Shown: positions 1 to 64,000, numbered from the stretch's first letter. The stretch is 64,000 nucleotides of DNA from Octopus sinensis (GCF_006345805.1 NC_043005.1:14694001-14758000); one strand, 5' to 3'. The notes: generated from the sequence alone by a model not told the origin. Made by a program: numbers and translations.

Positions 1-769
1 CTGAATGATAACTAAGTTATTTTACTAAATTCTTTGTTATATTTAAAATTAATTGAAAGAAACACAGAACATCTCAAAATAAATACAGTAAAGAAAGGGT
101 TAACAAATGAAACGTGCTGAAAGAAAAGAAGAAACATTGGAATTACTTGACATTTTAAGATCCAAGCTATTCCTCAAAGGATGGTGGCTGAAATATTTGT
201 TAGAATATTTTTGTTGAAATACAATGTCTTGGTTTCAGTTAATTTCGAGAATGATGAAGCATTTATTAAATAACTTTGGAATTTTAATGAAAGATTTTTC
301 ATTTCGACCACTTTAAAACAAAGAATTGATATTAGGGAAGTAGGGTCCATCTTTGGCAGGTTGTCACCAAAATGGTTCAGAAGTAAATGAATGGTAGCTA
401 TTAATATTTGTAATCATATTAAATTCAATGATTTAAATAATTAGTAGGAGGAAGAATTATCATTAATAATATTTGTTACGAACATTAAACACTTTTGATA
501 TATATGTAACAAATAATTTATTGTATGTTTGTATGCAAATCAAGCAAAATGTGAATATGTAAAAGGTGAGAGCTGCAATATCTCATATAAATAAAATCAT
601 AATTGCCTTTTAATAGTGAGAATAATTTCTTAGAGAGAAAGTGGAAGAGTAAAACTGATATTTAATGAAACAATATTCATCCAGGATCTAAAAATACAAG
701 GTGTCCCAATGGTCTCCGTGGAGGGATTAATTCTAAGGCTTTTATAAGACTGCTAAAACATCATCATCA

Positions 770-1760
770 TCATGAATATCTAACATCCACTGTCTATGCT
801 GGCATGGGTGGACAGTTTGACCAGGGTTGGTAAGCTGGAAGGCTGCACCAGACTCCAGTCTGATTTGGCATGGTTTTCTGCAGCTGGATGCTTTTCCTAA
901 CACCAACCACTCCAAGAGTGTAAATGGATGTTTTTATGTGCCACCGGCATAGGTGCTATTTGCATGACACCAGTATGTGCCATGACTGTGATTTTACTTA
1001 GCTTGATGGTTCTTCTTCTCAAGTACAACGTAATGCCAAAGGTCTTGATCACGGTGTCCTTGAGGCTCAACACTTAAAAGGAGCTTTTCACGTGCCACCG
1101 GCATCAGCCACTTTGCCTCTGTGAGGCCCAACATTTGAAAGGTGCACTTTATGTGCCATCAGCTATGACTATGATTTCACTTAGCTTGATGGGCTTTCTC
1201 AAGCACAGCATAATGCCAAAGGTCTCAGTCACCAGTCATTGCCTCTGTGAGGCTTAAAGTTCAAAGAGCATGCTTCACCACCTCATCCCATGTCTTCTTG
1301 TGTCTACCTCTACCACAAGTTCCCTCTGCAGTTAGAGACTGACACCTCTTTACACAGCTATCCTCATCCACATGCATCACATGGCCATACCATCACTGTC
1401 ATCTCTCTTGGACACCACACTTGATGCCTCTTATACCCAACTTTTCTCTCAAGATGCTTGCACTCTGTTGAACATGCACACAAACATTGTACATCCAGCA
1501 AAGCATACTGGCTTCATTTCTTTCAAACCAACGCATGTCCTCAGCTGTCACAGCTCATGTTTCACTGCCATAGCATAGCTGGTCGCACACAGGCATCATA
1601 CAATCTGCCTTTCTCTTAAAGAGAGAGGCCTTTTGTTGCCAGTAGAGGCAAGAGCTCTCTGAAATTTTCCCAGCCTATTCTTATTCTTATAGCTACACTT
1701 TTCAGCATCCACCTCTGCTACTAACTTGGTCACCTTGATAACGGAAGCTTATACCAATGG
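770..1760 (-). mobile_element. RTE-clade LINE 3' fragments
   Basis: Same 3' sequence and (ATG)n tail as the RTE at 16270-17935. Confidence 0.7.
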
Positions 1761-2019
1761 CAGTTTATTTACTGTACCTTTTTGGTGTTTATTGTACCTG
1801 TGTGTCTTCCACACACACAATGGCTATTTACCCTGTTAACCCTCCTCTGATATTGCTGCACCTCTTATATGTCCATAGTTTATTATTGCCATGATGCCTT
1901 TAGGTGCAAAAACTAAGCTTTTCTTTTTGTTTGGCATCACTTCTTACAAACTGATTGGCTGGAAAAATGTCAGTAGACTTTATAATAGAGTCAAGGAATA
2001 TATTGGATGAGGTGGTGAA

Positions 2020-2560
2020 ACATGACCTTTGAACACTGGGACTCATAGAGGCAGTGACAGGAGACCGGAACCTTTGGAGATATGCTGTGATTGAGAAGAC
2101 TCGGGAACTAAAGTGAGATTGCAGCCACACATGTCCAGCCCTGTTAAGAATACCCTGATGCGTTGGGCAATATGATATGCTTGAGAAGACCCGCTGAATA
2201 AAACGAATATCGTAACTAGGGCTGGTACCCCAGACTGGCCCCCATGCTGGTGGCACGTAAAAAGCACCGTCTGAACGTAGTCAATACCAGGTCCACCTGA
2301 CTGGCTCTCGTGCCATGGCACGTAAAAAACACCAACCAATTGTGATCGATGCCAGTACCTACTAACTGACTCCTGTACTGGTAGCATGTAAAAAGCACCC
2401 ACTACACTCTTGGAGTGGTTGGCGTTAGGAAGGGCATCCGACTGTGGAAACATTGCCATATCAGATTGGAGCCTGATGCAGCCACTCTCCAGACATCAGT
2501 CAAACTGTCCAACCCATGCCAGCATGGAAAACGGACATTAAACTATAATGATGATGATAA
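2020..2560 (+). mobile_element. RTE 3' end fragment with (ATG)n tail
   Basis: Matches the 3' ends of the other RTE copies in the window. Confidence 0.65.
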
Positions 2561-61116: not shown

Positions 61117-62569
61117 ATGATCCATGCTGTTGTTTCAACAGATAAATCTTCCTGGCACCAAATCCATTTTCCAAACCAAAGATGTAAAACTAAACACTAC
61201 ATTCCGATGCTCTACATAGAGATTCTGTCACATTTCCAATTATATTTCTCACCTTTATCCTCCTCCGCCTCCTCCTCATCATCATCAGTATTTTAATATT
61301 CATTTTGTACCTGCTTGTATGGGTCGTAAGGAATTTGTTGAGGTAGATTATTTCTAGGTGGATGCCCTTCCTCTCACTAACCCTCACTTGCTTCCAAGGA
61401 ATGTAATATTTCCTGATGGTGTGGACATAAATTGTGGCTTGTTGGAAACAATGGACACTGCTTGTATGATGGGGATGTTTGTTTACAACAACTATATGAT
61501 ATCAAGGAGATACAACCTGCACAAACACACACACACACACACACATATATATATATATATATATATATATATATATATATATATATATACACACATATAT
61601 ATATATATATATATATATATATCATATATGTGTGCAAACAGCCATACTACAAGTGTACGAACAGCCATGCTACAAGTGTATAAACAGCCATGCTACATGT
61701 GTACAAACAGCCATGCTACATGGCAGTGAAGCATGGTCTGTGACCGCTGAGGACATGCTTAAGCTCGCAAGGAATGAAGCCATTAGTCTCAGATGGATGT
61801 GTGGATGTGTAATGTCAGTGTGCATACTTGACAGAGTGTCAGTACGTTGTGAGAAAAGTTGGACCTAAGGAGCATCAGATGTGGTGTGCAAGAGAGACGA
61901 CTGCGCTGGTATCGGCATGTGGTGAGAATGGATGAGGATAGCTGTGTGTAAAAGTACCACACTGTAGTGGTTGAGAGAACCTGCGGAAGAGGTAGACCCG
62001 GAAGATATGGGATCAGGTGTTGAATCATGACCTTTGAATATTAGGCCTCACCGAGGCAATGACTAGTGACTGAGACCTTTGGAAATATGCAGTGCGTGAG
62101 AAGACCCGGCAAACCAAGTGAAACTATGACCTGTGGCCTATGCCAGTGGTGTAACCAGCCTACTTATGCGTACCTTTCCTTCACTGGACACTAAACTCTG
62201 CTTGCAAAGACCTGTTGAGGTAAGTGAAATTGAAATCGAAATCAAATTTGATGATTGGCATCCGTGCTAGTAGAGTGTGATTGCTGCCAGAGCAGCTGAC
62301 TGGCTTCCGCGGCGGTGGCACATAAAAAGCAGCATTCAAACATGATCATTACCAGCATCGCCTTACTGGCACTAGTGCTGGTGGCACATGGAAAACACTT
62401 GAGCGAGGTTGTTGCCAGTGCCGCTGGACTTGTTCCTGTGCGGGTGGCACGTAAAAAAACACCACTTCAGCATGGCCGTTGCCAGTACCCTCTGACTGGC
62501 CCTCATGCCAGTGGCACGTAAAAGCACCCAGTACACACTTGGAATGGCGGACGTCAAACGATGATGATG

Positions 62570-63670
62570 ATCATCATCATCACCATCATCATTGTTGCCG
62601 TCGTGTAACGTCTGCTTTCCATGCTGGTATGGGTTGGATGGTTTTATTGGGGATTGGTGAGTCAGAAGGCTGCACCAGGCTCCAACCAGATCTGGCAAAG
62701 TTTCTACAGCTGGATGCCCTTCCTAATACCAACCACTCCAAGAGCGCAGTGGGTGCTTTTATGTGCCACCGGCATGAGGGCCTTTTAGGCAGTTCTGGCT
62801 ACCTGCACGGGAGTTAGTCTGGCAGCACTGGGAACGACCACACTTGAATGCTGTTTTCCACGTGCCAGTTAGGCGATGCTGGCAACGGTCACGCTCAAAT
62901 GGTGCTTTTTACATGTCTCTGGCATAGGAGCTGATCAGTGGCCCTGGCAATGATCTCTCTTGGATGGTGCTTTTAATGTTCCACTGGCATGAGTGCTAAT
63001 CAGGCGGTACTGTTATCAGCCATGTGAGCGATTTTGATTTTGATTTTGATTTCACTTGCCTCAACAGATCTTCACAAGCAAAATTTATTGTCCAATGAAT
63101 GTGGGGTACTCATAAGTGGGTCAGTTATACACCACTGGCATAGTTCATGGGATATGGTCTCACTTGGCTTGTCAGGTCTTCTCAAGCACAGCATATCTCC
63201 AAAGGTCTTGGTCATTAGTCATTGCCCCAGTAAGGCCCAATGTTCGAAGGTCGTGCTTCCCCACTTCATCCAAGGTCTTCTTGGGTCTATCTCTTTCACA
63301 GGTTCCCTCAACTGCTAGGATGTCAATAAATGTGAAAAGCTCCTTTCAAATGTTGAGCCTCAGGGACACCGTGATCAAGACCTTTGGCATTAAGTTGTAC
63401 TTGAGAAGAAGAACCACCAAGCTAAGTAAAATCACAGTCATGGCACATACTGGTGTCATGCAAATAGCACCTATGCCGGTGGCACATAAAAACATCCATT
63501 TACACTCTTGGAGTGGTTGGTGTTAGGAAAGGCATCCAGCTGCAGAAAACCATGCCAAATCAGACTGGAGTCTGGTGCAGCCTTCCAGCTTACCAACCCT
63601 GGTCAAACTGTCCACCCATGCCAGCATAGACAGTGGATGTTAGATATTCATGATGATGATGATGTTTTAG
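62570..63670. mobile_element. RTE 3' fragments (minus ~62570-63330; plus ~63340-63670, mirror of 770-1090)
   Basis: Same 3' region and (ATG)n tail as the other RTE copies. Confidence 0.65.
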
Positions 63671-64000
63671 CAGTCTTATAAAAGCCTTAGAATTAAGCCC
63701 TCCACGGAGACCATTGGGACACCTTGTATTTTTAGATCCTGGATGAATATTGTTTCATTAAATATCAGTTTTACTCTTCCACTTTCTCTCTAAGAAATTA
63801 TTCTCACTATTAAAAGGCAATTATGATTTTATTTATATGAGATATTGCAGCTCTCACCTTTTACAAATTCACATTTTGCTTGATTTGCATACAAACATAC
63901 AATAAATTATTTGTTACATATATATCAAAAGTGTTTAATGTTCGTAACAAATATTGTTAATGATAATTCTTCCTCCTACTAATTATTTAAATCATTGAAT

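What the first reader, a model, noticed from the sequence alone, without database searches (positions are those of the whole stretch)
423..64000. Giant (>63 kb) inverted duplication with patchy identity strata and arm-specific insertions
Identity is estimated by eye. It is ~98-99% in the sampled parts of 7310-19051 and 423-1090, ~90% at 6120-7310 (14 differences in ~146 nt sampled), ~90-95% around exon 2, ~96% at 30605-30800 and ~99% at 31400-31800. Each arm has private insertions or deletions, and the inner breakpoint lies inside an R4-like LINE. This suggests an old duplication maintained by conversion. An alternative is two haplotypes mis-joined in the assembly, in which case the exon divergence would be allelic (balancing selection) and still remarkable.
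Basis: partly seen in the sequence, partly recalled or inferred. Interest (0 to 1): 0.72.

Follow-up and report, generated by a model that had tools for sequence, protein, structure and literature searches.

The report
Octopus receptor-gene palindrome with divergent exons
The window is the middle of a real, roughly 106-kb inverted duplication in the octopus genome that holds two head-to-head copies of an octopus-only receptor-like gene whose introns are kept almost identical while their protein-coding exons stay very different, a clear example of a known evolutionary pattern and not an assembly error.

Summary
The giant inverted duplication is real. The window is Octopus sinensis chr CM016867.1:14694001-14758000. 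The two arms meet at a 67-bp spacer (36045-36111), not a 4.7-kb one, and run about 50 kb each way, beyond both window ends.

The same palindrome, with the same arm-private insertions, is in the independent O. vulgaris assembly. The haplotig mis-join alternative is therefore refuted.

Each arm is one complete gene of an Octopus-restricted, Pfam-less type I membrane protein family. The left arm holds LOC118764737 on the minus strand. The right arm holds LOC118764774 on the plus strand. They are transcribed away from the centre.

The "identity strata" have a clear anatomy. About half of each arm is private transposon debris. Alignable introns are mostly 96-100% identical. Seven of the eight ectodomain exons examined (exon 3 is the exception) are sharp divergence peaks of 11-19% nucleotide divergence, with dS about 0.11-0.16 and dN/dS about 1.3-1.6.

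Exon differences are shared by both species and are as deep as the distance to an O. bimaculoides homologue. Some intron tracts group by species.

Best reading: an old fold-back duplication whose introns are homogenised by arm-to-arm gene conversion while exon divergence is preserved. This is a new, clean case of a known kind.

The parts
1..36044 (-). Left arm of the palindrome (the part inside the window). It carries exons 1-5 of LOC118764737 on the minus strand and continues about 15 kb beyond window position 1.
   Evidence: L002 1-38637 equals window 38637-1 at 100%
36045..36111 (.). Central spacer of 67 bp between the innermost arm pair 35967-36044 / 36112-36189.
   Evidence: the same centre is present in O. 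vulgaris
36112..64000 (+). Right arm of the palindrome (the part inside the window). It carries exons 1-5 of LOC118764774 on the plus strand and continues at least 22 kb beyond the window end.
28583..28637 (-). L exon 1 (coding part, signal peptide MLVLSYCSILFFVLPHFF). It is 1.9% divergent from R exon 1, the same as its flanks.
20760..20956 (-). It is 16.5% divergent in nucleotides from R exon 2 and 59% identical in amino acids.
14282..14369 (-). L exon 3. It is 5.6% divergent from R exon 3.
9435..9640 (-). L exon 4. It contains a divergence peak at 9484-9628 (27 differences in 145 nt), while the flanking introns are 0.7-0.8% divergent.
7747..7846 (-). L exon 5. It contains a divergence peak at 7753-7794 (17 differences in 42 nt), which is the hypervariable Cys-bounded hairpin loop of the domain.
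44873..44927 (+). R exon 1 (signal peptide MLVLTYCSILFFVLPHFF).
48108..48303 (+). R exon 2. It carries an A4-to-A3 homopolymer difference near its 5' end, in the O. sinensis assembly only, that breaks the frame if the standard acceptor is used.
54397..54484 (+). R exon 3.
59116..59321 (+). R exon 4.
60891..60990 (+). R exon 5.
15659..16228 (.). Intron tract (partner about R 52322-52891) with 12 sites grouping by species and 3 by arm. This marks arm-to-arm conversion after the sinensis/vulgaris split.
10742..12156 (.). Intron tract (partner about R 56626-58029) in which OsL-OsR divergence (10 differences in 2000 columns) is below the orthologous divergence (31-33 in 2000). It has 10 by-species sites.
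   Evidence: (binomial P=0.0009)
29020..30604 (.). Insertions private to the O. sinensis left arm: a SINE-like 400-bp copy and a LINE fragment with an RVT_1 ORF. Both are absent from the right arm and from the O. vulgaris left arm.
21264..27792 (.). Left-arm private block of transposon debris. It includes a Helitron-like Pif1 fragment as an internal inverted pair, 22429-23798 / 25434-26801. O. vulgaris has one copy.
1092..6259 (.). Left-arm private block: SINE copies, a LINE 3' fragment and a 62-bp tandem array at 5318-5766. It is shared with the O. vulgaris left arm.

Best explanation
The window is the core of a roughly 106-kb palindrome on an Octopus sinensis chromosome. It was made by an ancient fold-back type inverted duplication of one complete gene plus its upstream region. 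The result is two head-to-head paralogues of an Octopus-restricted, β-sandwich-rich type I membrane (receptor-like) protein.

Since then two processes have acted together. First, non-allelic (arm-to-arm) gene conversion repeatedly homogenises alignable intron sequence. It continued after the O. sinensis/O. vulgaris split. Second, the ectodomain-coding exons escape homogenisation and keep an old divergence.

The most likely reason for the escape is that converted haplotypes, which erase functional differences between the two receptors, are selected against. This would be reinforced mechanically, because 15-40% local mismatch blocks heteroduplex formation.

Independent transposon insertions and deletions in each arm produce the large private blocks.

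Shown: the structure, its presence in two species, the exon/intron contrast, the age ordering, and the post-speciation conversion tracts. Inferred: the fold-back origin, selection as the cause of exon escape, and a receptor function.
For: Structure:
- Searches show the arms and the 67-bp spacer.
- One search shows arms of 51-55 kb in O. vulgaris that end near the gene's 3' end.
- The palindrome is real in two assemblies.

Genes:
- An exhaustive HMMER search found 18 family members.
- Exons were mapped.
- L-type and R-type genes are annotated in both species.

Exon/intron contrast:
- Exons 2 and 4-9 are 10.7-19% divergent, against immediate flanks mostly 0.7-2%.
- Exonic columns are 14.1% divergent and aligned non-exonic columns 4.3%.
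- A permutation test gives P=0.0003 for the mean, and none of 20000 permutations reached 7 of 8 exons at 10% or more.
- The clusters have P of 1e-20 to 1e-24 against background.

The exon divergence is old and not ongoing:
- All 27+17 peak differences are shared by both species.
- Orthologous exon 4 differs at 0/206 and 1/206 sites.
- The exon-4 patch is 18.6% divergent L-R, 20% L-Obi and 21% R-Obi, whereas introns are 1.0-1.3% L-R against 8-14% to Obi.
- Derived changes split 10 on L and 12 on R.
- R exons 6-7 are closer to O. bimaculoides P0020 than to L.
- dS is 0.11-0.16 and dN 0.17-0.19, giving ω of 1.3-1.6.

Conversion after speciation.

Theory and precedent: PMC3924837.
Against: - Selection is not demonstrated. 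ω is only modestly above 1 and was not tested with codon models.
- Heterology alone might keep already diverged exons from converting.
- The by-species sites are few (39 of about 1060 variable sites in homologous columns, against 16 'cross' sites as a noise level). They are concentrated in two tracts.
- Short-read polishing of near-identical repeats could in principle mimic some homogenisation.
- Shared kilobase-scale transposon relics in the introns of both arms are absent from the compact O. bimaculoides homologue. This means either long conversion tracts or a duplication younger than the exon divergence suggests.
- The O. sinensis copies carry homopolymer frameshifts (L exons 7 and 9, R exon 2). 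Their coding integrity there is therefore uncertain.
- No expression data were available.
Confidence: 0.66

Rival explanations
1. The inverted duplication is young, only somewhat older than the sinensis/vulgaris split. The exons of one or both copies were later overwritten by ectopic gene conversion from more distant family members elsewhere in the genome, leaving the young introns untouched.
For: - Introns share the same transposon relics at 99-100% identity, and these are absent from the O. bimaculoides homologue L006.
- The divergent patches have sharp edges inside exons, with no indels and the frame kept.
- The per-exon affinities are mosaic.
Against: - No candidate donor exists among annotated proteins. 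The next closest O. sinensis member is only 39-41% identical.
- Nearly every ectodomain exon would need its own import event.
- Derived changes are split evenly between L and R.
- Non-coding inner-arm segments are also 10-18% divergent.
- More than half of each arm is private sequence already shared by both species, which argues for a long history before speciation.
Confidence: 0.12
2. The duplication is old and conversion occurs, but without selection. Exons simply diverged first or by chance, and local mismatch then blocks conversion mechanically, so the exon peaks are a neutral by-product.
For: - dN/dS is near 1 in exons 4-5 (0.87).
- Heterology is known to suppress recombination (general knowledge).
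- Some non-coding stretches are also diverged.
Against: - Seven of eight ectodomain exons are peaks, while immediately adjacent intron sequence is 0.7-2% divergent.
- None of 20000 permutations reached this.
- A neutral start gives no reason for divergence to nucleate in coding sequence specifically.
- The largest peak coincides with the family-wide hypervariable Cys-bounded loop.
- Overall ω is 1.3-1.6.
- The signal-peptide exon is not a peak.
Confidence: 0.15
3. The duplication is young and the exons evolve by targeted hypermutation or a burst of positive selection. This would resemble the accelerated exon evolution with conserved introns that has been reported for some rapidly evolving secreted-protein gene families.
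For: - Exons are more divergent than introns even against the O. bimaculoides homologue (21% against 8-14%).
- ω is at or above 1.
- The peaks are rich in transversions.
Against: - Orthologous exons of O. sinensis and O. vulgaris are virtually identical (0-1 of 206 sites in exon 4; exons 5, 6 and 8 have 0-2 differences). There is therefore no ongoing acceleration.
- Synonymous sites are as diverged as non-synonymous ones, which selection on protein sequence alone does not explain.
Confidence: 0.05
4. Assembly artefact: two haplotypes, or a fold-back chimeric read, joined in inverted orientation.
For: - The O. sinensis assembly does contain redundancy. A second copy of the left arm plus the centre lies 0.88 Mb away at 0.07-0.6% substitution divergence over the window-equivalent part, and up to 1.2% further out.
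- That assembly has 5.2% duplicated BUSCOs (PMC10700109).
Against: - The same palindrome, with the same centre and the same arm-specific insertions, is in the independent ONT/Omni-C O. vulgaris assembly.
- The arm differences are shared across species.
- The arms encode proteins only about 60% identical.
- There are no gaps in the window.
Confidence: 0.02

Closest known systems
Duplicated genes under gene conversion with selection-maintained peaks of divergence (Innan / Teshima-Innan model; primate red/green opsin exon 5), as reviewed in PMC3924837
   Same: Paralogues are kept nearly identical over long times by conversion. Divergence is sharply elevated in coding segments and low in flanking introns. 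The peak is older than the flanks.
   Different: - Here the copies are inverted arms of a palindrome, not tandem copies.
- Almost every ectodomain exon is a peak, not just one exon.
- The proteins are only about 60% identical.
- About half of each arm has been replaced by private transposon sequence.
- The function of the gene is unknown.
Large gene-bearing palindromes of mammalian and avian sex chromosomes with arm-to-arm gene conversion (e.g. human Y P1-P8; PMC6790999)
   Same: A palindrome of roughly 100 kb that contains genes, is conserved across species, and shows evidence of arm-to-arm conversion.
   Different: - Those arms are typically more than 99.9% identical along their whole length, and the genes in the two arms are kept the same. 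Here the arms are mosaic (70-100% identical, half unalignable) and the gene copies are kept different.
- The spacer here is 67 bp, not kilobases.
- No link to a sex chromosome was tested.
MHC-type 'old exons, young introns' pattern (own knowledge: intron homogenisation by recombination around exons under balancing selection)
   Same: Coding segments that face ligands keep ancient, trans-specific divergence with ω at or above 1, while adjacent introns are homogenised.
   Different: There the divergence is between alleles at one locus. Here it is between two fixed paralogues in one haplotype, a kind of permanent heterozygosity. There is no evidence that this family is immune-related.
Fold-back (hairpin-primed) inverted duplications (PMC10622511)
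   Same: Inverted arms meet at a very short spacer, and the duplicated segment is contiguous.
   Different: That mechanism was shown experimentally in yeast and cancers. Here it is only inferred from geometry. Any junction microhomology has been eroded by age.

Membership tests
Palindrome maintained by arm-to-arm gene conversion (sex-chromosome type) | Two inverted arms flanking a short unique spacer | tested here: met
   Arms pair down to 36044/36112, leaving a 67-bp spacer. The same is true in O. vulgaris.
Palindrome maintained by arm-to-arm gene conversion (sex-chromosome type) | Near-complete (over 99.9%) arm identity along the whole arm | tested here: not met
   Only about 45-50% of each arm aligns. 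Aligned blocks range from 70 to 100% identity, with a mean of 94% inside the window.
Palindrome maintained by arm-to-arm gene conversion (sex-chromosome type) | Arms within a species more similar than orthologous arms between species (concerted evolution) | tested here: met
   This holds locally. At 12180-10097, OsL-OsR has 10 differences in 2000 columns against 31-33 in 2000 for orthologues (P=0.0009). At 16228-15659 there are 12 by-species sites. Elsewhere, for example 10192-7150, it does not hold.
Selection-maintained divergence peaks under gene conversion (Teshima-Innan) | Sharp local peaks of paralogue divergence inside homogenised flanks | tested here: met
   Exon 4 is 13.1% divergent against flanks of 0.7 and 0.8%. 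Exon 5 is 19% against 2.0 and 1.5%. Exon 6 is 16.9% against 1.1 and 4.3%. Cluster P is 1e-20 to 1e-24.
Selection-maintained divergence peaks under gene conversion (Teshima-Innan) | Peaks coincide with functionally relevant coding sites | tested here: inconclusive
   Peaks coincide with 7 of 8 ectodomain exons. The strongest is the family's hypervariable Cys-bounded loop. No functional data exist.
Selection-maintained divergence peaks under gene conversion (Teshima-Innan) | Peak divergence predates flank divergence (trans-specific) | tested here: met
   All peak differences are shared by O. sinensis and O. vulgaris. The exon-4 patch is as far from its paralogue as from the O. bimaculoides homologue.
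Haplotig mis-join / false duplication | Structure absent from an independent assembly of the same or a sister species | tested here: not met
   The structure is present, collinear, in O. vulgaris GCA_951406725.2.
Haplotig mis-join / false duplication | Half read depth on each arm and no reads spanning the centre | not testable with these tools
   No read data are available.
Immunoglobulin-superfamily receptor | Significant match to Ig/FN3 profiles or folds | tested here: not met
   There is no Pfam hit for the domain and none precomputed for any family member. The best whole-ectodomain Foldseek hit is PirB/LILRB3 at E 7e-4 but TM 0.12. The best single-domain hit has E 0.024 and TM 0.34-0.45, to assorted β-sandwiches.

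The most novel reading that the evidence does not exclude
The palindrome may be a functional architecture and not just a relic. On this reading it is a conserved, conversion-active inverted gene pair that fixes two ancient ectodomain types of an Octopus-specific, hypervariable, tyrosine-motif-bearing surface receptor in every haploid genome. That would be balanced polymorphism made permanent. Conversion would keep regulatory and intronic sequence, and hence expression, matched from a shared central control region. Such a system would be a candidate invertebrate recognition or immune receptor pair.
Probability: 0.15. Interest if true: 0.7.

Novelty: new member of a known kind. Interest (0 to 1): 0.45.

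Why it matters
It removes a suspected misassembly from a cephalopod reference genome and replaces it with a validated structure of about 106 kb that is conserved across two species.

It offers an unusually clean natural example of selection, or heterology, against gene conversion. Almost every ectodomain exon is a divergence island in homogenised introns. This is in an animal lineage where neither palindromes nor concerted evolution have been characterised, as far as the searched literature shows.

It also flags an orphan, Octopus-restricted receptor-like family, with a hypervariable disulfide-bounded loop and C-terminal Tyr motifs, as a candidate for rapidly evolving recognition functions.

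Practically, it shows that the O. sinensis assembly holds a near-identical second copy of this locus and likely homopolymer frameshifts. Both matter for anyone annotating this family.

Tried and rejected
- Pfam scan of the joined exon 4-5 domain found nothing.
- A word-seeded database search with the 103-aa domain found nothing. The exhaustive HMMER search was needed.
- My early guess of an Ig V-like domain, from a '...D.S.IYSC' motif, was not borne out by Pfam or fold searches.
- The whole-ectodomain and single-domain AlphaFold models are confident β-sandwiches, but Foldseek against the PDB gave only insignificant, heterogeneous hits.
- Look-ups of P0002, P0017, P0019 and P0020 loci failed because those products are not on record. 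As a result, the O. bimaculoides arrangement of the closest orthologues could not be examined. The one O. bimaculoides locus obtained (L006) has gaps (5190 N) and no partner within 10 kb upstream.
- I proposed an alternative acceptor to rescue R exon 2. This became unnecessary once O. vulgaris showed that the frame break is an O. sinensis-only A-run length difference.
- The four-way MAFFT alignment of whole arms forces non-homologous private blocks together and inflates 'by-arm' counts. It was redone with a local-identity filter.
- A literature search for octopus palindromes returned nothing specific.
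Full report
OBSERVATION. The giant inverted duplication is real. Seeded and gapped self-comparison give one collinear inverted chain from L 423..37172 to R 64000..37715. The window has no Ns. The stretch 423-1091 is 98.7% identical. The core 7150-16879 is 96% with gaps and 97.5-100% per 200 bp outside two peaks. The stretch 30605-31840 is 96.8%. Two figures were too high: the 6.3-7.1 kb segment is about 80%, and the exon-2 region is 88%. Only about 16.7 kb per arm aligns inside the window; the rest is arm-private.

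WHERE IT IS FROM AND HOW FAR IT GOES. A 103-aa peptide joined from two putative exons had no Pfam hit and no word-seeded homologue. An exhaustive HMMER search found 18 relatives. These led to annotated genes and their loci. The window is an exact match to Octopus sinensis GCA_006345805.1, chromosome CM016867.1:14694001-14758000. With the flanking sequence, the arms pair from a 67-bp spacer (36045-36111) outwards. The nested arm pairs at the centre are 35967-36044/36112-36189, 35917-35973/36384-36440, 35872-35919/36526-36573 and 35725-35792/36680-36747. The apparent 4.7-kb spacer is inner-arm sequence broken up by private insertions. In O. vulgaris, where both arms are fully covered, pairing runs to about 55 kb on the left and about 51 kb on the right, ending near the 3' end of the gene. 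The total is about 106 kb. The start coordinate 423 is just the mirror of the window end.

NOT A MISASSEMBLY. The O. vulgaris chromosome OX597823.1 was assembled independently from ONT and Omni-C data (PMC10700109). It is collinear with window 20018-64000 and beyond. It passes through the inner left arm, the same centre and the whole right arm, and it has the same arm-private blocks. Both gene types are annotated in both species, adjacent and head-to-head. The haplotig alternative is therefore refuted. A few insertions are specific to the O. sinensis left arm: the SINE-like and LINE RT fragments at 29020-30604, and a second, inverted copy of a Helitron-like Pif1 fragment.

WHAT THE ARMS ENCODE. 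Each arm is one complete gene of an Octopus-restricted family. All hits are from O. sinensis, O. vulgaris or O. bimaculoides, and none has a Pfam domain. The left arm holds LOC118764737 on the minus strand and the right arm LOC118764774 on the plus strand, transcribed away from the centre. The window holds exons 1-5 of each. Exons 6-9 and the transmembrane (partly detected) and tail exons lie outside it, in both arms. The proteins have a signal peptide and an all-β ectodomain (AlphaFold pLDDT 74.8 for the whole ectodomain and 84.5 for the exon 4-5 domain). They also have a TM helix and a tail. In family members the tail ends in YEEL, YEDL or EIYY motifs. Foldseek gives no significant PDB relative, so I file the protein only as an uncharacterised receptor-like protein built of β-sandwich domains.

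ANATOMY OF THE 'STRATA'. Three components explain the patchiness. (i) About half of each arm is private transposon debris, namely SINEs, LINE 3' fragments and Helitron pieces. Most of it is already shared by the two species. (ii) Alignable intron sequence is mostly 96-100% identical. (iii) The ectodomain exons are sharp divergence peaks. Exon 2 is 16.5% divergent, exon 4 13.1%, exon 5 19%, exon 6 16.9%, exon 7 18.7%, exon 8 10.7% and exon 9 15.6%, against immediate intron flanks typically of 0.7-2%. The signal-peptide exon (1.9%) matches its flanks. Inside exons 4 and 5 the differences are concentrated in 145-nt and 42-nt patches with 27 and 17 differences. Against the background rate this has P of 1e-24 and 1e-20. 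There are no indels and the reading frame is kept. Random placement of segments of exon size reaches the observed mean in 0.03% of permutations. It never gives 7 of 8 segments at 10% or more divergence. A naive splice-site and open-frame scan of 12.7 kb recovers exactly exons 4 and 5.

AGE ORDERING. Synonymous divergence in the exons (dS 0.11-0.19) is about as high as non-synonymous divergence (dN 0.165-0.19). ω is 0.87 for exons 4-5 and about 1.3-1.6 over exons 2-8. Both are roughly ten times the intron divergence. All peak differences are shared by O. sinensis and O. vulgaris. Orthologous exon 4 differs at 0/206 and 1/206 sites. The exon-4 patch is 18.6% divergent L-R, 20% L-O. bimaculoides and 21% R-O. 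bimaculoides, whereas the adjacent introns are 1.0-1.3% L-R against 8-14% to O. bimaculoides. Derived states split 10 on L, 12 on R and 5 ambiguous. In exons 6-7 the R type is closer to O. bimaculoides P0020 (67% and 84% amino-acid identity) than to the L type (56% and 50%). In exons 3-4, L and R are each other's closest relatives. The published splits are about 2.5 My for sinensis/vulgaris and about 34 My for bimaculoides (PMC10700109). On that scale the exon divergence is of the order of the older split, and the intron identity is secondary. Exons are not currently hypermutating.

CONVERSION. In homologous four-way columns there are 536 by-arm, 39 by-species and 16 cross sites. The by-species sites cluster. 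There are twelve at L 15659-16228 (against three by-arm) and ten at L 10742-12156. In the enclosing 2000 aligned columns (12180-10097) the two O. sinensis arms differ at 10 sites, while the orthologues differ at 31-33 (binomial P=0.0009). In contrast, 10192-7150 (exons 4-5 and intron 4) has only by-arm sites. Conversion has thus continued after speciation in some intron tracts. Elsewhere the last homogenisation predates speciation.

MECHANISM. The best explanation has three parts. An old fold-back type inverted duplication of a whole gene accounts for the tiny spacer and for arms that end at the gene's 3' end. Recurrent arm-to-arm conversion then homogenises the introns. Exon divergence is preserved because converted haplotypes are selected against, reinforced by heterology. 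This is the situation modelled by Innan and by Teshima and Innan and seen at opsin exon 5 (PMC3924837). Here it extends to nearly all ectodomain exons of an inverted pair. The strongest peak is the family-wide loop of variable length and sequence between two invariant cysteines, at the tip of the last β-hairpin. Exon-4 changes include alternating residues on one strand. Both fit a ligand-facing surface, but that reading is inference.

RIVALS. Import of exons from third paralogues is not excluded, but it lacks donors: the next O. sinensis relative is 39-41% identical. It also fits the even polarisation poorly. Neutral heterology-limited conversion does not explain why divergence nucleated in coding sequence. 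Accelerated exon evolution is contradicted by near-identical orthologous exons. Misassembly is refuted by the second species.

CAVEATS. There are no reads, no expression data and no codon-model tests. By-species sites are few. Short-read polishing of near-identical repeats could blur arm differences, although opposite errors in two assemblies at the same tract are unlikely. The O. sinensis copies have three homopolymer-type frameshifts that are absent in O. vulgaris.

VERDICT. This is a genuine, conserved, roughly 106-kb autosomal-looking palindrome carrying a diverged head-to-head receptor-gene pair. It shows intron homogenisation and exon divergence islands. It is a new and tidy member of a known kind, of moderate interest.

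Noticed in passing
L005 (O. sinensis CM016867.1:15571252-15634676), compared with window 1-38637 and the left flank: A second copy of the left arm, the palindrome centre and the flank lies 0.88 Mb away on the same chromosome. It is collinear over about 59 kb. Substitution divergence is 0.07-0.6% over the part matching the window and up to 1.2% further out. Its gene, LOC118764738, is intact where LOC118764737 has frameshifts. It is either a retained haplotig or a very recent segmental duplication. The assembly has 5.2% duplicated BUSCOs according to PMC10700109.
   Followed up: partly
window about 48125 (R exon 2 A-run); L002 exons 7 and 9, outside the window: There are three homopolymer-length frameshifts in the O. 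sinensis gene copies: R exon 2 (A4 to A3), L exon 7 and L exon 9. They are absent from O. vulgaris and from the L005 copy. They probably are long-read assembly errors, and they explain the truncated RefSeq models.
   Followed up: partly
window 22429-23798 and 25434-26801: There is an internal inverted pair, 98% identical, within the left arm. Each member carries a Helitron-like Pif1 helicase fragment (Pfam Pif1_2B) next to 165/166-bp tandem arrays (23280-23798, 25257-25950). O. vulgaris has a single copy, so this small palindrome arose in the O. sinensis lineage.
   Followed up: partly
window 35910-36056 (+), and its mirror 36112-36440 (-): An ORF-like segment (MSFDVSQYVIPDLLEELCKQ...KRKM) abuts the palindrome centre. 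The O. vulgaris annotation uses it as the first exon of the R-type gene (P0001). Its mirror copy is interrupted by a tandem duplication of about 195 bp. Whether it is a real alternative first exon, a relic of another gene or part of a transposon is unknown.
   Followed up: no
window 36750-37155, 37504-38130, 39065-39647, 47590-47992, 23048-23284, 25947-26160, 27010-27261: A repeat family of about 400 bp has at least nine copies in both orientations, 88-95% identical, concentrated near the palindrome centre. It is unclassified.
   Followed up: no
window 5318-5766: A 62-bp tandem array (7.3 copies, 85% matches) lies inside SINE-like sequence in a left-arm private block.
   Followed up: no
window 38455-38714: A (CCA)n-type low-complexity stretch gives long His-rich or Val-rich ORFs on the two strands. 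It is in a right-arm private insertion.
   Followed up: no
L006 (O. bimaculoides CM046612.1:43891578-43915024): The O. bimaculoides homologue LOC106880512 has the same exon structure in about 10 kb, against about 39-47 kb for the genes in O. sinensis and O. vulgaris. The introns of the sinensis/vulgaris lineage are expanded by mariner-like, Penelope-like and RT relics shared by both arms.
   Followed up: partly
family alignments A2 to A5: Full-length family members end in Tyr motifs (IYEEL, VYEDL, EIYY) and have two conserved N-x-S/T sequons in the exon-4 domain. One O. vulgaris model (P0026, 1009 aa) looks like several family genes fused by annotation.
   Followed up: no
O. vulgaris R exon 2 (L001), compared with window 48108-48303: R exon 2 differs at 12 of 198 sites between the two species, far more than the other exons. 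In O. vulgaris it is slightly closer to the L type. This suggests an occasional partial conversion that reaches into an exon.
   Followed up: no
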